Positions 1 through 38,990 of a stretch of 64,000 bases of DNA are shown here, piece by piece. Source of the stretch: Geosiphon pyriformis uo1 (taxonomy: Eukaryota; Fungi; Glomeromycota); the NCBI GenBank assembly GCA_016748015.1, contig JAAOMT010000741.1, forward strand, positions 186,001 to 250,000, given 5' to 3'. Below the pieces are notes generated by a model that saw only the letters and a list, made by a program, of their open reading frames with translations, made no database searches and had not been told where the DNA came from. Each line of letters starts with the position of its first letter. Within the stretch, counting starts at the first letter, position 1. A program made the translations under genes and the position numbers.

Positions 1-2
1 AT

Positions 3-536
3 TCGTCACCTCGAGCTAATGCTGCCCCTTATTCATTAAAAACTTACACTTGTTCATTTGCAACTTGTGGTCGTCTCTTCAAAAGACTCGAACATTTGAA
101 GCGTCATGTTCGTACACACACGATGGAAAGACCTTATTCTTGTCAAGTTTGTGGCAAAAGATTTTCAAGATCAGATAATTTAGCTCAACATCGTAAGACT
201 CACGAGAGAGGAATGAATAACTCTCCAACTCCTTCTGATGATGGTTCTAATTCTGATCTTGGTTATGATGATGTTGTTGTTGTTAATAACAACTCACCTG
301 TGAATAACGATTGTTATACCTATGAAGCCACCAATGTTCCCACCGTGGCAGATCTTACTTCATCATGTGTTCCGGAAGGTCTTGTTACTTCTGTGTATCA
401 TTGTAACGAGCAACCGACCACCACTTATAACCATCCTCATCTTCATCATCATCATCAACACCATCATCAGACACCATATTTCGGTTTAACGTCACCTTTT
501 TTGGAAGCTAGTGTTGGTAATGGGATTCTTGTGTAG
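3..536 (+). CDS. STE12: Ste12/SteA-like transcription factor, C-terminal tandem C2H2 zinc fingers (5' part outside window)
   Basis: Frame 3 reads [55 protein letters not shown], the C2H2 pair typical of filamentous-fungal Ste12 proteins. The STE domain is not in the window. Confidence 0.75.
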
Positions 537-763
537 AGAAAAAATTAAAATGTGCGCAATCATCGATTGGAATCTATCAGGGTTTTTTTGATGCATATCT
601 CTGTGTCTCTGTGTGTGAGAGAACCTTTGTGGAAAAGGTTTTTCTTTTTTATTATTCAAGATATTTTTGGGCTGGGTAAAGGGCTGGACTTTTTATTTTT
701 ATATATATATATATTGGCGAAAATTTTTTTATCTTCATAAAGTTCTTTATTGTTTATAGCAGG

Positions 764-820
764 ACAACAACAACAACAACAACAACCACAACCACAACAA
801 CCACAACAACAACAATAACA
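764..820 (+). repeat. (CAA)n/(CCA)n microsatellite
   Basis: acaacaacaacaac... run downstream of the STE12 stop. Confidence 0.9.
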
Positions 821-912
821 AAACCATTATAACCGAACAAAATCAACAGAAATTTAGGGTATCTCTGTTTCTTTTACATCAATATCAAAATACTTTTTTT
901 CTTCTTTTCTAG

Positions 913-2248
913 TACTTTTTTTTTTTTCGAAACCAGAAAAATGACAATATTCATGACGACAGGCGCGTCTTTTTTCAAAATTTTCAAAATTTCCGATTTA
1001 TATCTTATACTCATTTATCAATTACATACGTAAAAATCCTTGAATATTGTCTTGTAACATTTTCACAACGGGGACAAAATCAACAGTGTGAATGACATTA
1101 TTAATGTCAACGTTTCTTGTCCTTTTTCTTTGGGGGGAACGTTTTTTGTACCATAAAAAAATGTTCAGTGCGCTGTTGGTCACACTATATGGAGGAAGCA
1201 CTGAACATTCTGTTTTTTGTTTTTTTGTTTTTTTCGATATTTAATATCAAAAATTAGCTCTTTTATCAAAAGTTAAACAAAAAGAATTTCGGAAACGAGC
1301 GATTCATTTTGTTTTGAAAATTCATATTGCAACCGTCAACCTATAAATCAGACCACATTCAACATCCCCAAAACACTTGTAATTATCTTCCCCTTTTTTT
1401 CGATTTTTTGGTTGTTCCTACCGGTGAAGATGCTTCGAAACAAAATCGATCGAAAACTTCCCTAAAAGTAATAAAGTTTCTTTTAGTAATATACTTTCCT
1501 TTAAATAATGAAATTATTCCTTGGAGTCCCCGTCGTGTAAAATATCAATACATGACATCTCTAATGTATATAAATATATATATATTGTTATTTTTCAAAG
1601 CAGTAATTGCTGGACAATTTCATTTACCCTTTTTTTTAACATCCTCTTCCCTTTTTCCTCTCGCTTATACATATTTTCAACGGTTTTTTGATTCGTGGTG
1701 TATGTGTTTTTATATGGGGATCTATGTGATTTTTTTTTTCTTGGGTTTTTTATGGTGTTTGTTTATAAAACTGTAAGTTTATTTCTTTTTCCAAATTATA
1801 ATTTAGATTACGGTAAAAATATATGTTGTTTTTCTATTTGTCAACAATCTCGTTGTCATTTGTTTCTGTAAACAAAAGTGGTTTTTTTTCTTTTTTTGTT
1901 TTTCTTTGACCACGAGAAAATGGAAGAAAGTTGGTGTTATGGGACTTTTCTTGTTGAGAGAAGGTTTTGATACGGCAAAAGACGCGGGAACTCTATTTTT
2001 CTAGTTGAAATTCATGGACCTTGATTTCACTACCAATCATCATTTTCATTGATCTCAAATCGAAAATGTAATCCCTAATCTATCCAGAAACACCTCGTAA
2101 TCTTGACCAAAACCATCTCTGAAGCTTTCCTTAGACGCTTACTTGCATAAACAACAATAACAACAACAACAACAACATTTATTTTCAAAATTTCTTTGTC
2201 ATTAAACCACACGAGATCAATAACGTGGTCAAGGACCAAAGAAAAACA
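913..2248 (+). ncRNA. Candidate large structured RNA (lncRNA or very long structured 3'UTR)
   Basis: Nested, colinear long-range complementary segments (934-947/1853-1868; 1323-1376/1704-1825; 1897-1914/2224-2248) and many local hairpins. G-U pairs favour the + strand. Confidence 0.5.
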
Positions 2249-3412
2249 CCATTAATCAACCAAGTGAAAAATTTTGCAATTTCACATAAATCTCGCTCTG
2301 TCCGATACTTTTCCCCTTAATCACATACACCGACAAAAAAAAAACTCTTCTTTTTGCATCGGTTTTTTGTAACTCTTTTTTTTACCATTTAAATTAATCT
2401 TGGGGTTCTTATCCAGATTTTTCTCTCATTAGAAAAACAAAATTTCTTTTTTTTTTTTTCTCTTTTTAAAATTCTTTGTAATTAAGTAGCAAAATAAAGC
2501 GGGTTATTTTATTTTTATTTTTATTTTTCTTATATTCAATAGCAGCACCAATAGCAACATTTATTTCTCTCGAAGACCAATAGAAACAGAAGCACAGACA
2601 ACAATATCTTTTCCAAGAGAAAAAAAGGGTCCTTGAAAAGTTAGATTACGCCGCAAATTTGAGTTGAGATAATTTGTTAAAATTACTAGTGCGTATTGAA
2701 TTGGCAAAAAAAAACAACCCCCATCATAGAGAGATAAAAAAGAGTTAAAATTATGTATCTACTACAAGTTTTTGACTGGTTTCAGTCTAAATTTATGTTT
2801 CTTCCTACTTTTACCTTCAACTTCACCCGACAAAACTTACCCTTTTTTTTTAAATTAGAAATTACTCTATATGGTACGGTACAAATTTTTGACACAACAC
2901 TTTTTTTCAAACTTACACGTAGCATACCTCTTGCAATCAATCACAAATATAGATAAGAAGAAAAATTTTTTATTTTGATATGATATTTGTCTCCATGTCT
3001 CCAATGTTGGTTAAAAAAACCAAACCAAACCATATTAAGGAAAGGGTTATTCTTTTTCTTAATTATGCAAAAAGTTAAAGTACTCTGTTGTTTTTTTTGT
3101 TTTTTTTTTTTTTTTTTGCCAAAAGACTCACATCATTACATCATTTTTTGCTTAAAAAAAAATTTGAAATTTGGTTATCATAAAGTAAATAACCATCGTC
3201 GCCGTTGATTGCCGTTATCTCTTTTTTTTCTAAATCTCGGGTGTTTCTCACCATCCATAATAAAATGATATCAACATACGAAGATTAATTGTTTTTTTGT
3301 TTTTTTTTGAGTTTTGATAAGAATTTTTTTTATATGATTTAATTGACAAGAAGGTATGCGTATATCGCATTTTTTTTAACAATTTTTTTCTATCTTCTTT
3401 TTTTCACAAAAA

Positions 3413-3449
<37 letters not shown>

Positions 3450-3509
3450 AAGTTTTTTTTTTTTTAGAAAAGCCAAATAAAATTGGATGTTTAAAGTTTA
3501 CAATTACCA

Positions 3510-3785
3510 ATGTTATTCTATGCCGTGATAACTGGATCCAATTTTTCAAGGATTTTGAAATCCTCATCATGGCGTGTATCTTTTAAACCACAAGAATCAT
3601 CATTCTACTCCTATCGCAATTTATACTCCTCCTCCTCCTCTTCCTCTTCCATAACTTCAGCTACAACTGCAGCATTCTTTTTTTCTTCGACCTTCCATCA
3701 ATTAATAAACCAACAACCATCATCATCAAATTCAACAATTATCAATGTTCCATTCATAATTTTCAATACCATTAATAATGATAAT

Positions 3786-3818
<33 letters not shown>

Positions 3819-4497
3819 AAAAATATTAGTACAAAGTATACAGTGAGATCATTAAACAAAAGTTTTGTATACAAACCTTCTTCTTCCCCTGCCCCTGCTT
3901 CTACCTCTGCCTCTGCCTCTCCTATCTTATCCACATCCAATGAAAAATCACCACCCCAATTAATGATATTATTGGGATGGTTCAACTCTACACCAAGATA
4001 TCTTCGTCATTATGTCAATATTTATACGGATGTATTTAAAGTTGATACCCTTACACATATTCCACCATTTTATCATCCCTTCTTACCATGGACATTAATG
4101 CCACATATACGTCGTTTAGCACATGATTTATTATCATATTGGGCTGAAAATGGTCGTCCTGAGGTGGGTTTTCATGTATTTAGTAATAATGGTGCCTATC
4201 ATTACGCCTTATTATTTCATGCCATTCGAGAAATTTCCGCTTCGATGCCAACTGGACATTCAGAGACTTTGACTTTGACCAAAATTCATTCTATAAACAA
4301 GAATAATATATCACGTGATGCTACATTATTTTTAAATTCGATAAAAACTTGTGTAATGGATTCGGCTCCATCCCCTATCGTGCCAAAATATGTTGCAATG
4401 GGAGTCGCTGGTGGATTTCTACGTCCTGCATCTCAATCCAGTTCAACCGTGACATATTCAGAATCTTCATCGATAATAAAGAAAAATAACGATTATG

Positions 4498-4542
<45 letters not shown>

Positions 4543-4889
4543 GTAATAATCCTAATATCATCAAACGAGTTCCCATTAAACCACCTTCCTACCTTACCTC
4601 ATTCTTAAACTTTTATTTCTCTTTGAAAATTACCAAAAAATATCAAAGATTTGCACATGAAGCGATTAATAATGTCCCTGGTGGTCAGGTTCGTTACCTC
4701 TTCATCTATAGTCGTGATGATCAAATAGTTCCTGACACCGAGGTAGAAAATTTTATGAGAATGTTACGTAAAGAACGTGGTGTTCGTGACGTGATTGGTA
4801 AAAAATTTTCTCAAGGTAGCGATCATGTACAACATTATATGAGACATCCGAACGAATATTTGGAATCATTACGCGAATTTTATTATTAA
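3510..4889 (+). CDS. DUF829/TMEM53-like alpha/beta-hydrolase-fold protein with poly-Asn/Ser insertions
   Basis: Intronless 459-aa ORF with LMILLGWFNS, FHVFSNNG, VMDSAP, YLFIYSRDDQIVP and SDHVQHYMRHPNEY motifs. Confidence 0.85.
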
Positions 4890-5383
4890 AATCAATTTCA
4901 TTACCCTTACCCAAATTCATGATCACTCAAAAAATTGTAAATGGGTACTTTTTGCTTTGACGTATTTAATAATAATAATAATAATAATGTGAACTTTTTA
5001 TTATGATTTCAATTTAATTATTGATATCGGAAAAATCTTTTTCATTAATTTATTATTATTATTTGTTTGTCTATTTGTTTGTTTGTTTGTTTGTTGGTTG
5101 GTTTATTTTAGCGTCTAATAATAACAAACAAGTATTATCCTGAATTTGTACCACAGTATTAATAAAAGATAATATAATTAAAAAAGTTTCTATCCTTCTA
5201 TATAAAATATACAAATTGTCTAGTTATAAAAATCCTCCCTAACAGGTAAATGTAATATGTGGGTCTTTAGTAAGGATAATAGGAGGGAGTATATTAAATA
5301 CACGGCAAAAATTATTGATTATATTATTACCATAAATTAGTCACCAAGCTAATCTAACCCAATCCATATAATAAATAATTATA

Positions 5384-6299
5384 TTAATGTTTATGAAAGC
5401 AATTATTACAACTTCCCTTCTTAAACACATTTGGTGAATAATCATCACAACCACATTCTTGGCAAGCTGCAACTAATTCTGATGTGGTTACTGCTGATTT
5501 TCCGAAATAGTCTTGGGGTATATAGGAATTGTTAGATCCACCTGGTGGGGAGATTGCTTTTGGTGAATTGCTAATCATTGATGAACTTTCATTCGCCCTA
5601 GAGGTCCGAGGCAGTGTACGAGATGATAATGTTGGAGAATCACGAGATGGAACTGGTGGTTTGGAATTACGAGATGGAATTGGTGGTATTTTAGCAGGTG
5701 ATCCAGGTCTTTGAGATGAATTAGATTTTTGTGACGTGTTACTACTACCAGTGTTATTATTCTTATTACTTGATGATTGTATATAAGAAAATCGTTGGGA
5801 AGAGGAACGTAATTGTTGATTGGGAAATGAGTTATGACGCGATGAAGTGGATGGTTTCTTTGGCGGAGGTAATTTAACTTCTTCCTCCTCCTCCTCCTCC
5901 TCCTCCTCCTCCTCCTCTTCTGCATCTTCTGGTCCTTCCTCTTCAGTTTCCTCTTGTTCTTCAAATGGTTCTTCAACGTATCTATCACTGATAAATTTCA
6001 AATCAGAATCATCATCAGGTGATGACTGTCTAGAAACAACACTGGTAGTTCCACGTGGAGGTACACGAGGTTCTCGTTCAACTAAAACTTCTTTGGTATA
6101 ATTGGCTGGAAACATTCCACTTTTTGTGTTACCATCAGACTCGGTAATTTCACCGATCCACCACCCTTCATCAATTTCCTCTAGAACAGTGATTATGTCC
6201 CCGCCTTCCATAGCTAACTCATCTTCTCCCTCACCCTCATAACTATATAGGGCTCTCACCTTTTTCTTTGGTGTCGGAGAAGATGTGTGCCCTGATGAA

Positions 6300-6331
<32 letters not shown>

Positions 6332-37000: not shown

Positions 37001-38005
37001 GAAAACGATATATAGCCTCGGGCGGCAAGTAATGAGGGTATCTTTTCCAAAAAAATTTGAGCAATATTTAACGACTGAAGACAATTGATTGATTGAATCT
37101 ATGAAGCCCGCTTAGGAACTTTACCGTCGTCTCTTTGTTGCTTTTATCTTACCCTATTGGAAAGTCGACATCTGCCCCATCATCGGTCATGTAGAAAAAG
37201 CCGAAGTCAGCCAATTTCACGTTTCCCTAAAAATTTGTATTCAAACCTCAAAAACTTTGATTTCATAAATTTGGGATCTTTCTTGTCACGTTAGTAATCT
37301 ACCTCGGCATCCAGCAAAATATTATGTGGTGCCAAGTTATGATGAGTCACATTGTTGTCATTCAAATAACTAAGAGCTTTCAAGATTTGAAATGCCCATT
37401 TCCGTATATGTTCAAATGGAACTCTGATGAAGAAAATGACAAGATTAAAATTGGTCGTTTATACGATAGAAAATATGAAGGCCGAGTATACCTTGAAATC
37501 TGATAATTTCCTTGTTCGTCAAGTTGATACAATTTACCAAGATGATCCTGATGATATTCAAATATGACAAATAATCGATCTTGATGATAGATAGATATAT
37601 TTTCTGATTAGAATTTTTAAGAAAATAAATTTTTCCAAAAGAAAAGTCAAAACCCTTATAAAAGTCTACTTCAAATAACCATGTTTTCCTTTGACAATTT
37701 CAATATAATCACAAAGATTCGGATGTATTAGTGTCTAAAAAGATGAAAAGTTGCAAATTTTCAAAATTTTGCTCGCTTTGGTTTGGTCTTTTAATTTGAG
37801 AAACTAGCCTCGAGGAATTGTAAAAAGATCATGCCTTTAAAAATTGAAAATGCCCAACTATTTCAGTTGTAGCTGGTGTCATTGGCAAACCGTTGTGACC
37901 AACTTTATCCTGAGTTCTTGTTGTAGCGAAAAAATTGCTAACTCCCAGTTGCACATCTTTTTGAACACTGGTACTAAGATCTTTATCGTTGGCGAAGGTT
38001 GCCAT
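34023..38005 (-). CDS. TBCK: TBC domain-containing protein kinase-like protein (pseudokinase + TBC Rab-GAP + rhodanese); multi-exon
   Basis: N-terminal [16 protein letters not shown]|[22 protein letters not shown]|[40 protein letters not shown]|IDV|[12 protein letters not shown]|[21 protein letters not shown]; rhodanese LAGGI. Confidence 0.93.
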
Positions 38006-38156
38006 TAATGATTTGTCGCCGAGAGGACAAGTTCATTCTCTCTAATCAGTTTTCATTTCACTTCAAACACGTGAAGATCTGATATCAGATAAATAGGGCA
38101 ATCCTCAAAAAAATTCTTTTGCCATTTAAATATATTGGTTGTCAACTTCAGTTAGC
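38006..38156. promoter_or_regulatory. 151-bp bidirectional promoter (TBCK/RRP43) with CACGTG E-box
   Basis: Head-to-head ATGs at 38005 and 38157; CACGTG at about 38068. Confidence 0.5.
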
Positions 38157-38990
38157 ATGAGTTCAACAGAAATTACCCCATCTGTCAAGCCAGCCTTTAC
38201 CTTTGAAGCAGAGAATTTTAGGAAAATACAACCGAAAGAATTTGTGCGAAAATTTCTAGCACAAAATATTCGACCGGATGGAAGAGTGTTCCGTCAGTTT
38301 CGGAAAACTACCATTAACCTCGGTTTGTTTAATAACTAAAAAATTTTATATTCAACAAAACGTAGTAGAGTTACAATTAATTTTTATATAGGACAAATCA
38401 AAACTGCCGAAGGTTCAGCGGTTGTTCGAATAGGCAGCACTACTGTGGTTTGTGGAATCAAAGCTGAAGTCGCGGAGCCCAAAACAAATTCTTCAACTGA
38501 CGGCTACCTTGGTAGCTTTTGTCACTACCCAGTCTCCCTTTATAAGTTTTAGATCAAAATACATATTTTAACTTGAGGATTTCGACAGTTCCTAATGTCG
38601 AACTCTCGCCAATTTGTTCTCCTAAGGTAAAACCTGGGCCTCCAAACGAACTAGCCCAAGTAATGAGTGAAAATTTGAACAAGCTGCTGAAGAGGTTAGT
38701 ATGTACCGTAATTAGATCTAGCAATTTGAAACATACTAAATTTTTTTCAAATCTTTTTTAGTGCGGCTGTATTATCCCTAGATGACTTATGTATTGAAGA
38801 GGGCAAAGCTGTTTGGGTATTGTATGCAGATGTTGTTTGTATAAATTATGATGGAAATGTTTTTGATGCATCTGTGATTGCAATGTTGGCGGCATTGAGT
38901 AACGGTAATTTTCTTTTCTTTTCTTTTACCAAACATAAAGATTTATAAAATAACAATAATAATAGCAATAGCAATAGCAATAGCAATAAC

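What the first reader, a model, noticed from the sequence alone, without database searches (positions are those of the whole stretch)
913..1880. Unannotated large structured RNA downstream of STE12: domain 1 (~970 nt, long arms plus loop-loop pairing)
Seen: the ends pair (CAGAAA-AATGACAA 934-947 with TTGTCATT-TTTCTG 1853-1868; ACTTTT ~914 with AAAAGT ~1875). One arm pairs in strict antiparallel order over ~500 nt: ACCGT 1332/ACGGT 1810, TATAAA.CAGAC 1342-53/GTTTGTTTATA 1757-67, CACAT 1354/ATGTG 1724, ATCCCCA 1364/TGGGGAT 1715, AAACAC 1371/GTGTTT 1704. Local stems: AATGTTCAGTGC 1160/GCACTGAACATT 1198 (12 bp perfect), GACAATATTCA 943/TGAATATTGTC 1041 (11 bp, competes with the closing stem), GGGGACAA 1070/TTGTCCTT 1117, and a TTCG-GAAA-CGAG GNRA hairpin at ~1288. 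The loops of the 1070 and 1160 hairpins are complementary (TCAACAGTG/CGCTGTTGG; AGTGTGA/TCACACT), suggesting a kissing loop or pseudoknot. G-U wobbles work on the + strand. Inference: a conserved tertiary-structured lncRNA or a giant regulatory 3'UTR of the Ste12-like mRNA. I recognise no RNA family here.
Basis: partly seen in the sequence, partly recalled or inferred. Interest (0 to 1): 0.8.

Follow-up and report, generated by a model that had tools for sequence, protein, structure and literature searches.

The report
Conserved structured 3'UTR of STE12 mRNA
The stretch is not a free-standing giant RNA but the long 3' untranslated region of the STE12 transcription-factor mRNA, whose short sequence blocks and hairpins are shared by every arbuscular-mycorrhizal fungal lineage sampled, which points to strong, still undescribed control of this gene at the RNA level.

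Summary
The proposed global fold does not hold: the closing stem, the 500-nt arm, the 1070/1117 stem and the kissing loops are absent in Ambispora and have pair probabilities of 0.17 or less. Folding energy is not distinctive (z -2.4; seven control windows range from +1.0 to -3.2).

The comparative signal is strong. The DNA just after the STE12 stop (window about 613-1625) shares colinear, near-identical blocks with 12 other STE12 loci or transcripts from Archaeosporales, Glomerales, Diversisporales and Paraglomerales. Neighbouring non-coding DNA shows no such similarity.

Supported helices:
- H1, 943-953/1041-1051
- hairpin H2, 955-969
- hairpin D, 1160-1209
- long-range C2/E, 1064-1075/1526-1537
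- hairpin F, 1605-1619

H1 and H2 carry compensatory changes. G-U pairs fit the sense strand.

Relatives' transcript-like contigs join the coding sequence to these blocks and end in A-runs, so this is a 3'UTR.

Several hairpins have CNGG(N) loops, the Smaug/Vts1 recognition consensus. They are about tenfold enriched on the sense strand, and the genome encodes a Vts1-type SAM domain.

Block C2 also complements a conserved motif at the mRNA 5' end.

No Rfam family matches. Transcription in this genome itself could not be tested.

The parts
1..536 (+). 3' end of the STE12-like coding sequence (C2H2 zinc fingers); stop codon TAG at 534-536
   Evidence: ORF 96-536 with zf-C2H2 Pfam hits. The last codons align with the ends of the Ambispora STE12 genes. 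The full 591-aa protein is P0006.
537..1900 (+). Inferred STE12 3'UTR. The 3' end is not mapped in this genome. The conserved part runs from about 613 to about 1625, with weaker similarity to Ambispora up to about 1749.
   Evidence: Colinear similarity to the STE12-downstream DNA of Ambispora (84-129 bits; shuffled queries reach at most 38 bits; neighbouring intergenic DNA at most 50 bits). Relatives' contigs join the CDS to these blocks and end in A-runs about 470-880 nt past the stop.
613..625 (+). Conserved block pre-A (GTGTGAGAGAACC; GYGAGGGAA in relatives)
   Evidence: Alignments
678..696 (+). Conserved block A (AAAGGGCTGGACTTTTTAT)
   Evidence: Identical in Ambispora and L005; 1-2 changes in Rhizophagus clarus and Paraglomus
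943..953 (+). Helix H1, 5' arm (GACAATATTCA)
   Evidence: RNAalifold predicts it unaided. Three pairs show changes on both sides (A-U to G-C twice in L133; G-C to A-U in the window) and there are 5 G-U cells.
955..969 (+). Hairpin H2 (GACG[ACAGGCG]CGTC). The loop holds CAGG. Most relatives have a CUGGU pentaloop.
   Evidence: Present in all 13 sequences. The stem covaries: C-G to U-A in Paraglomus, A-U to G-U four times.
1041..1051 (+). Helix H1, 3' arm (TGAATATTGTC)
   Evidence: As for the 5' arm
1061..1075 (+). Block C2 (TTTCACAACGGGGAC). It pairs with block E. Alternatively it pairs with the 5'UTR motif CCCCGTTGTT, 455 nt upstream of the ATG and outside the window (about L132:2306-2318).
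   Evidence: CAAYGGG core in all 13 sequences. Duplex with E is -22.3 kcal/mol (0 of 200 shuffles as stable). Duplex with the 5'UTR is -18.9 kcal/mol (0.5% of shuffles).
1080..1094 (+). Block C3 (TCAACAGTGTGAATG)
   Evidence: Conserved in Ambispora and in L005/L081. It may extend the 5'-3' duplex in the window, A. leptoticha and L081. This is a lead only.
1160..1209 (+). Hairpin D (12-bp stem 1160-1171/1198-1209; conserved GGAGG at 1189-1196 in the loop)
   Evidence: The 6-bp base is kept in 9 sequences, with U-A to C-G three times and 6 G-U cells.
1291..1311 (+). Degenerate copy of hairpin H (GGAAACGAGCGATTCATTTTG). Relatives have GGGAAACGA[CCGGT]TCGTTT.
   Evidence: Alignment. Strict SRE-type hairpin in L081, R. 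clarus, L099, Diversispora, Acaulospora and Paraglomus. In the window the loop is GCGAU and the stem has a C-A mismatch.
1493..1504 (+). Conserved block G (ACTTTCCTTTAA)
1526..1537 (+). Block E (GTCCCCGTCGTG), the 3' partner of C2
   Evidence: 11 of 12 pairs in the window, with an A-C mismatch that never varies. Present in 9 of 12 species and absent in Paraglomus and L133. Single-side changes give G-U. One G-C (Acaulospora) and one U-A (L081) exchange.
1550..1572 (+). Block E2 (ACATGACAT, 1550-1558) followed by a PUF-type UGUANAUA motif (TGTATATA, 1565-1572)
   Evidence: A UGUA..AUA element lies 23-36 nt after E in every species except Paraglomus.
1605..1619 (+). Hairpin F, AATTG[CTGGA]CAATT. 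This is the window's one strict Smaug/Vts1-type recognition hairpin.
   Evidence: In 9 sequences the loops are CUGGA, CCGGU, CUGGU or CAGGG. C1, G3 and G4 never change while N2 and N5 vary. The consensus CNGGN0-3 is taken from PMC4053848.

Best explanation
Window 913-1880 lies inside the long (over 1 kb) 3' untranslated region of the STE12 mRNA.

Shown: the UTR holds an array of short blocks, and at least five helices, shared by all four orders of Glomeromycotina sampled. The helices are H1 enclosing hairpin H2, a long-range C2/E helix enclosing hairpin D, and hairpin F. All are read on the mRNA sense strand.

Inferred, most likely mechanism: the UTR is a platform for post-transcriptional control of STE12.
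1. Hairpins H2, H, F and the inner hairpin of D display CNGG(N) loops on stems whose sequence can vary. That is the recognition element of SAM-domain proteins of the Smaug/Vts1 family, which in yeast and flies recruit the Ccr4-Not deadenylase and translational repressors. The fungus encodes such a SAM domain.
2. Block C2 (CACAACGGGG) can pair with block E inside the UTR, or with a conserved CCCCGUUG motif in the first 50 nt or so of the mRNA. That would allow a 5'-3' closed form or a switch between the two pairings.
3. A conserved UGUANAUA element after E may add control by a PUF protein.

For: Conservation:
- Colinear blocks are shared with Ambispora gerdemannii and A. leptoticha.
- The blocks are also found in Rhizophagus clarus, Diversispora eburnea, Acaulospora colombiana, Paraglomus brasilianum and 13 environmental contigs.
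- Controls: neighbouring intergenic DNA gives at most 50 bits and shuffled queries at most 38 bits, against 84-129 bits for the UTR.
- The region is single copy in its own genome.

Structure:
- RNAalifold predicts H1 and H2 without guidance.
- A covariance model built from 10 sequences finds the domain in the 3 species left out.
- 94% of cells are paired against 86% in shuffles (0 of 500 shuffles reach it).
- 7 pairs change on both sides against 3.1 in shuffles (0 of 500).
- Slid controls give 28-49% paired.
- Hairpin D covaries.

Strand:
- About 24 G-U cells against 6 variable A-C cells.
- z is -2.4 on the + strand and -1.1 on the - strand.

mRNA context:
- Contigs of 2.2-3.6 kb carry the 5'UTR, the CDS and these blocks together.
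- Five independent assemblies of one species stop within about 25 nt of each other, three of them with A-runs of 13 to over 30.
- L133 has A29 followed by adapter-like sequence and poly-G, and is fused to a bacterial tmRNA. That is typical of transcriptome assembly.
- Five contigs begin 0-45 nt before the CCCCGTTG motif.

SRE reading:
- 21 strict CNGG(N0-3) hairpins in 12 UTRs against 3.6 +/- 1.9 in shuffles (maximum 10).
- 2.0 per kb on the sense strand against 0.38 per kb antisense and 0.2 per kb in the rest of the window.
- In the loops C1, G3 and G4 are invariant while the N positions vary.
- The consensus is taken from PMC4053848.
- A Vts1-type SAM domain lies at G000:C600:386971-387138 (E 4e-17 to PDB Vts1, 2e-5 to Smaug).

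5'-3' pairing:
- C2 against the 5'UTR is more stable than 98% or more of shuffles in 9 of 12 species.
- It is 14 bp perfect in R. clarus.
- There is an A-U to G-C exchange in Paraglomus.
Against:
- The A-runs at contig ends could in part be genomic. Acaulospora has an A-rich stretch at the aligned place.
- The sample set is small (13 sequences, about 9-10 lineages), and most paired columns never vary.
- C2/E and C2/5'UTR each rest on only one or two compensatory events.
- C2/E has an invariant A-C mismatch.
- The alignment behind one search was fitted to the structure.
- In the window only hairpin F is a strict SRE. H2 has an extended loop, H is degenerate, and F has near-zero pair probability in single-sequence folding.
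- H1's 5' arm is missing in Diversispora, Acaulospora and L135.
- Block E is missing in Paraglomus.
- The 5' motif was not found in Diversispora, Acaulospora or L133.
- No binding or functional data exist for any fungus of this group.
Confidence: 0.7

Rival explanations
1. An independent long non-coding RNA gene sits just downstream of STE12, with its own start and a global tertiary fold.
For: A TATA-like run at 700-715 follows conserved block A. There is a large unannotated gap after STE12 in the window and in Ambispora. The + strand folds better than shuffles.
Against: The blocks begin about 80 nt after the stop in every species. They lie on the same contigs as the coding sequence in all 13 transcript-like contigs. 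The proposed end-to-end stem and long arm are not conserved. The position relative to the stop codon is held across four orders even though the neighbouring genes differ.
Confidence: 0.08
2. The blocks are conserved DNA elements, such as terminator, enhancer or transcription-factor sites. One candidate is a Myb-type CAACGG site present in opposite orientation in the promoter and downstream. Under this reading they are not RNA structure.
For: Most block positions never vary, as expected for protein-binding DNA. CAACGG and its complement occur both upstream and downstream of the gene.
Against: Paired arms change together. G-U cells outnumber variable A-C cells about 4 to 1, an asymmetry with no meaning for duplex DNA. 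CNGG hairpins are enriched on the sense strand only. The blocks are present in transcript-like contigs.
Confidence: 0.07
3. It is a structured 3'UTR, but it works mainly as a localisation or storage signal, for example transport of STE12 mRNA along coenocytic hyphae or into spores. Under this reading Vts1-type decay or repression is not the main function.
For: Multi-hairpin zipcodes in long UTRs are known, for example yeast ASH1 (from general knowledge). The hairpin D loop motif GGAGG and blocks A, G and E2 have no assigned partner.
Against: No known zipcode motif was identified. The CNGG loops fit a defined protein family better.
Confidence: 0.12
4. The pairings are chance complementarity in AT-rich, low-complexity DNA with no function.
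For: 9-, 10- and 12-mer inverted repeats are at chance level. A control window folds even better relative to shuffles (z -3.17).
Against: It cannot explain near-identical blocks shared with lineages whose proteins are 48-66% identical, nor the covariation.
Confidence: 0.03

Closest known systems
Smaug/Vts1 recognition elements (SREs) in mRNAs, such as the Drosophila nanos TCE and yeast Vts1p targets
   Same: Hairpins with a CNGG(N0-3) loop on a stem of no fixed sequence, several per mRNA, in a 3'UTR. C1, G3 and G4 are fixed and the N positions are free. A Vts1-type SAM domain is encoded in the genome.
   Different: Binding is untested. The elements sit at fixed, conserved places within a larger conserved fold. 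Known SREs are usually scattered and poorly conserved. STE12 is not a described Vts1 target. In this window only one hairpin meets the strict definition.
Long-range 5'UTR-3'UTR base pairing in cellular and viral RNAs (p53 mRNA, PMC10158990; flavivirus cyclisation sequences)
   Same: An 8-14 nt stretch at the mRNA 5' end is complementary to a conserved 3'UTR block. Both are kept across lineages, with one compensatory exchange.
   Different: No physical evidence exists. A second partner inside the UTR (block E) competes for the same block, which has no described counterpart in p53. The 5' motif was not found in three of the twelve species.
PUF-protein binding elements (UGUANAUA) in fungal 3'UTRs
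   Same: A UGUA..AUA motif is held at a fixed distance after block E in all species except Paraglomus.
   Different: The motif is short and common in AT-rich sequence. The evidence is positional conservation only.
Rfam cis-regulatory and large non-coding RNA families (telomerase RNA, RNase P/MRP, U snRNAs)
   Same: Short conserved blocks separated by variable spacers, as in fungal telomerase RNA.
   Different: No Rfam match at E of 1 or below, apart from two chance hits far under their thresholds. No conserved telomere template: CCCTAA at 1460 is not kept in Ambispora. The region is contiguous with a coding sequence.

Membership tests
Smaug/Vts1 recognition element (SRE) | Hairpin loop CNGG followed by 0-3 further bases, with C1, G3 and G4 invariant | tested here: met
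   Hairpin F at window 1605-1619 has loop CUGGA. In 9 species the loops are CUGGA, CCGGU, CUGGU or CAGGG, and only the N positions vary. H2 and H loops in relatives are CUGGU, CCGGU or CGGGU. The consensus is from PMC4053848.
Smaug/Vts1 recognition element (SRE) | Stem of no fixed sequence; pairing matters, not identity | tested here: met
   The H2 stem changes on both sides in three pairs while staying paired. L135 has a wholly different stem around a CCGG loop. The F stem varies only through G-U.
Smaug/Vts1 recognition element (SRE) | More frequent than chance in the target mRNA | tested here: met
   21 against 3.6 +/- 1.9 in shuffles. 2.0 per kb sense against 0.38 per kb antisense and 0.2 per kb background. 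For the window alone the count is 1 against 0.35, which is not significant.
Smaug/Vts1 recognition element (SRE) | A Smaug/Vts1-type RNA-binding SAM domain protein is present in the organism | tested here: met
   G000:C600:386971-387138 (L143) matches PDB Vts1 SAM domains at E 4e-17 and Smaug at 2e-5.
Smaug/Vts1 recognition element (SRE) | Bound by the SAM domain, with an effect on decay or translation | not testable with these tools
   Needs binding assays and reporters.
5'-3' UTR cyclisation (p53 mRNA or flavivirus type) | Conserved complementary sequences in the 5' and 3' UTR | tested here: met
   CCCCGUUG near the 5' end against CAACGGGG in block C2. The duplex is more stable than 98% or more of shuffles in 9 of 12 species (table).
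5'-3' UTR cyclisation (p53 mRNA or flavivirus type) | Covariation that keeps the pairing | tested here: inconclusive
   One A-U to G-C exchange (Paraglomus lineage) and two G-U changes. Seven of ten pairs never vary, and two species break pair 2.
5'-3' UTR cyclisation (p53 mRNA or flavivirus type) | Physical interaction of the two ends | not testable with these tools
   Needs probing, cross-linking (PARIS or SPLASH) or gel shift.
Independent long non-coding RNA | Own transcript, separate from the neighbouring mRNA | tested here: not met
   In relatives the blocks lie on the same contigs as the STE12 CDS. This could not be tested in the window's own genome.
Any Rfam 15 family | Score at or above the family's gathering threshold | tested here: not met
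   Window 1-6000: only DGCR5 (25 bits against 50) and CrcZ (25 against 95). Eight relatives' contigs: no match in the UTRs.
Inverted-repeat transposon (MITE) | Terminal inverted repeats and multiple copies in the genome | tested here: not met
   Window 850-1950 is single copy in the 128-Mb genome. The 'terminal' arms are not conserved.
PUF-binding element | UGUANAUA-type motif in a 3'UTR | tested here: inconclusive
   TGTATATA at 1565-1572. A UGUA..AUA motif lies 23-36 nt after block E in all species except Paraglomus. The motif is common in AT-rich sequence and binding is untested.

The most novel reading that the evidence does not exclude
The STE12 mRNA of arbuscular-mycorrhizal fungi carries an ancient two-state RNA switch. 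Block C2 in the 3'UTR pairs either with the extreme 5' end of the mRNA, giving a closed form, or with its near-copy, block E, inside the UTR. Vts1/Smaug-type and PUF-type proteins bound to neighbouring hairpins would set the balance. This would gate translation of a transcription factor needed for host entry, and it would be conserved since the origin of the group.
Probability: 0.2. Interest if true: 0.8.

Novelty: new variant of a known kind. Interest (0 to 1): 0.62.

Why it matters
STE12 is the end point of the pheromone/invasive-growth MAP-kinase pathway. The Rhizophagus gene (GintSTE) restores host penetration in a plant pathogen lacking its own copy (cited in PMC3834313).

Fungal non-coding sequence usually decays fast. 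Here, near-identical blocks and paired helices in a UTR are shared by Archaeosporales, Glomerales, Diversisporales and Paraglomerales. By general knowledge these lineages are separated by several hundred million years. That implies that control of this mRNA is as constrained as the protein itself.

The finding gives concrete, testable handles (CNGG hairpins, the C2/E/5' triad, a PUF site) in organisms that are hard to manipulate genetically. The tests can be run in yeast or in vitro.

It also shows that single-sequence folding of long AT-rich RNA misleads. The true signal came only from comparison with relatives.

Tried and rejected
- Telomerase RNA: the only template-like CCCTAA (1460) and TTTAGGGTA (854) are not conserved in Ambispora.
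- RNase P/MRP and other large RNAs: no Rfam match.
- Inverted-repeat transposon: single copy in the genome.
- Hidden gene: ORF 1327-1776 (149 aa) has no Pfam hit and no conservation in relatives (tblastn E of 0.57 or more). Indels between blocks are not multiples of three.
No letters of 2428-2481 were sent to any search afterwards. All later queries stop at 2427 or start at 2482.
- Metagenome pattern scan: the pattern was too loose.
- Whole-genome search with the covariance model R1 failed twice on the server.
- Synteny through DUF829 fails in Glomus cerebriforme.
- Accession numbers of the environmental samples were not found in the paper library, so their RNA origin rests on internal evidence only.
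Full report
**Setting**

The window opens inside the last exon of an STE12-like gene. The ORF has C2H2 fingers and its stop codon is at 534-536. About 3 kb without a long ORF follow, up to a DUF829 gene at 3510-4889. The genome has 128.3 Mb in 792 contigs and about 30% G+C. The nearest DUF829 and STE12 proteins are from Ambispora, at 48-66% identity. These figures fit Geosiphon pyriformis (129 Mb, 795 scaffolds, 29.25% G+C; PMC9453076).

**The observation**

Counts of perfect inverted repeats:
- 9-, 10- and 12-mers are at chance level.
- 11-mers are over-represented: 4 against 0.74 expected, P about 0.01.

The MFE of 913-1880:
- On the + strand, z is -3.0 with 20 shuffles and -2.40 with 64 shuffles.
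- On the - strand, z is -1.65 and -1.11.

Seven ORF-poor control windows of equal length from this window span z +0.98 to -3.17.

Other helices swing with the chosen boundaries: H1 is 0.05 or 0.97 and C2/E is 0.86 or 0.19. Single-sequence folding cannot settle the matter.

**Relatives**

In both Ambispora genomes STE12 lies on the other side of the DUF829/BAR-SH3 gene pair, again followed by about 3.5 kb of unannotated DNA. That DNA is colinear with window 610-1094 and 1527-1749 (64% over 503 nt, 129 bits).

Controls with the same settings:
- The DUF829/BAR-SH3 spacer gives at most 30 bits.
- The DUF829 upstream region gives at most 50 bits, from a simple repeat.
- 50 shuffled queries give at most 38 bits.

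The three-way alignment shows runs of identity separated by variable spacers.

Using the uninterrupted 584-aa Ambispora STE12 ORF as query, I fetched these further STE12 loci:
- Rhizophagus clarus, Diversispora eburnea, Paraglomus brasilianum and Acaulospora colombiana (genomes).
- Eleven short environmental contigs.
- Two more from a metagenome pattern scan.

The same blocks follow the stop codon in all of them, in the same order. In window coordinates:

| Block | Coordinates |
|---|---|
| pre-A | 613-625 |
| A | 678-696 |
| B | 943-953 |
| H2 | 955-969 |
| C1 | 1041-1051 |
| C2 | 1061-1075 |
| C3 | 1080-1094 |
| D | 1160-1209 |
| H | 1291-1311 |
| G | 1493-1504 |
| E | 1526-1537 |
| E2 | 1550-1558 |
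| F | 1605-1619 |

The region is single copy in its own genome.

**Is it RNA, and which RNA?**

Thirteen contigs of 2.2-3.6 kb hold a 5' leader, the intron-less coding sequence and the blocks on one molecule.

For one species (protein P0014), six of eight contigs from six separate samples were read. Five of them stop within about 25 nt of each other, roughly 865-880 nt past the stop codon. Three of these carry A-runs of 13, 21 and over 30.

L133 has A29 followed by adapter-like sequence and poly-G. Its 5' part is a bacterial tmRNA (117 bits). That is a chimera typical of transcriptome assembly.

Five contigs from different lineages begin 0-45 nt upstream of one conserved motif, CCCCGTTG.

I take these contigs to be polyadenylated mRNAs, so the blocks lie in the STE12 3'UTR.

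Caveats:
- Acaulospora has a genomic A-rich stretch at the aligned place.
- The sample accessions could not be traced in the paper library.

**Structure**

RNAalifold on ten sequences predicts two helices unaided:
- H1: 11 bp, 943-953 with 1041-1051.
- H2: 5 bp, within 955-969.

A covariance model built from that alignment recovers the domain in the three species left out: Diversispora 27.8 bits, L135 23.8 and Acaulospora 22.7.

Counts on the 13-sequence alignment:
- 94.0% of cells are paired, against 86.0% in shuffles (0 of 500 shuffles reach this).
- 7 pairs change on both sides, against 3.1 in shuffles (0 of 500).
- With partners slid by 1-3 columns, 28-49% of cells are paired.

This alignment was fitted to the model, and the sequences are few and related. 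The numbers are therefore support, not proof.

Hairpin D keeps a 6-bp base in nine sequences, with U-A to C-G three times.

The long-range helix C2/E (1064-1075 with 1526-1537) has 11 of 12 pairs in the window. The remaining position is an A-C mismatch that never varies. Changes elsewhere in this helix give G-U pairs, plus one G-C exchange (Acaulospora) and one U-A exchange (L081). Its duplex energy beats all 200 shuffles in the window and both Ambispora species.

G-U cells (about 24) outnumber variable A-C cells (6).

**Leads to mechanism**

*Loops.* Hairpin F reads AATTG[CUGGA]CAATT. Across nine sequences its loop is CUGGA, CCGGU, CUGGU or CAGGG. C1, G3 and G4 are fixed, and positions 2 and 5 are free. 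H2 and H have CUGGU, CCGGU or CGGGU loops in most relatives, and the inner hairpin of D has CUGG in some.

This matches the Smaug/Vts1 recognition element: a CNGGN0-3 loop on a non-specific stem (PMC4053848). Strict hairpins of this kind were counted as follows:
- 21 in twelve UTRs, against 3.6 +/- 1.9 in dinucleotide shuffles (maximum 10).
- 2.0 per kb on the sense strand.
- 0.38 per kb on the antisense strand.
- 0.2 per kb in the rest of the window.
- 0.39 per kb in relatives' flanking DNA.

The genome encodes a SAM domain that matches the solved Vts1 domains at E 4e-17 and Smaug at 2e-5.

In the window itself only F is strict. H2 has a 7-nt loop containing CAGG, and H is degenerate.

*The 5' end.* The STE12 5' leader is also conserved in blocks. 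Its first block, CCCCGUUG, lies 455 nt before the ATG in this genome. It is complementary to C2.
- The match is 9 bp in the window and 14 bp perfect in R. clarus.
- It is 9 bp with an A-U to G-C exchange in Paraglomus, which lacks block E.
- The duplex is more stable than 98% or more of shuffles in nine of twelve species.
- In the window, A. leptoticha and L081, a second stretch (5' UCACAnUGUUG with C3) would extend it.
- E (CCCCGUCGUG) differs from the 5' motif (CCCCGUUGUG) by one base, so the two compete for C2.

*A PUF site.* A UGUANAUA-type element sits 23-36 nt after E in all species except Paraglomus.

**Conclusion**

Most of the drawn fold is chance.

What is shown:
- the conservation;
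- the sense-strand helices H1, H2 and D with covariation;
- the location in an mRNA in relatives.

What is inferred:
- transcription and the 3' end in this genome;
- Vts1/Smaug and PUF binding;
- the 5'-3' contact and its competition with E.

No Rfam family matches. I found no paper describing STE12 UTR elements in these fungi. I file it as a new variant of a known kind: a cis-regulatory structured UTR built from known element types.

Noticed in passing
L132:2250-2760 (G000:C645:184250-184760), upstream of the window: The STE12 5' leader is also conserved in blocks across Glomeromycotina. Examples are CCCCGTTG, TTTTTTGTCTCTGGTTTTGCTAG, ATAGACAGAACCTCTTT, CCAAGGAGCCGCGC and TTTGTTTGATACAAA. Only the first block was examined.
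   Followed up: partly
L133:84-425: The environmental STE12 contig L133 (JGI 3300059624) carries a complete bacterial tmRNA (Rfam RF00023, 117 bits) fused to the fungal mRNA. It is a chimeric assembly and suggests an RNA origin for the contig.
   Followed up: partly
window 1-6300, L002 and L003: Gene order differs. In the window it is STE12(+), DUF829(+), BAR-SH3(-). In both Ambispora species, with STE12 on +, it is STE12(+), BAR-SH3(+), DUF829(-). The DUF829/BAR-SH3 pair is therefore inverted, while the conserved UTR stays with STE12.
   Followed up: partly
L002:9817-11571 (-) and L003:17593-19383 (-): The deposited Ambispora STE12 gene models have 504 and 518 residues. The A. gerdemannii locus holds one uninterrupted 584-aa ORF, and the gene is intron-less in R. 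clarus, Diversispora and Paraglomus. The annotated introns may therefore be artefacts.
   Followed up: no
window 762-830: A (CAA)n/(CAC)n microsatellite lies between blocks A and B in this genome only. It accounts for part of the extra UTR length relative to other species.
   Followed up: no
window 37501-38468: This ORF-poor control window folds better relative to its shuffles (z -3.17, 16 shuffles) than the region under study. It was not examined further.
   Followed up: no
L143 (G000:C600:386971-387138, - strand): This locus encodes a Vts1/Smaug-type SAM domain, the candidate reader of the CNGG hairpins. The full gene model was not built.
   Followed up: partly
window 1064-1075 with 1526-1537: The A-C mismatch at the fourth pair of helix C2/E is the same in all nine species that have E. 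The 5'UTR partner has U there and pairs perfectly. The reason is unknown.
   Followed up: no
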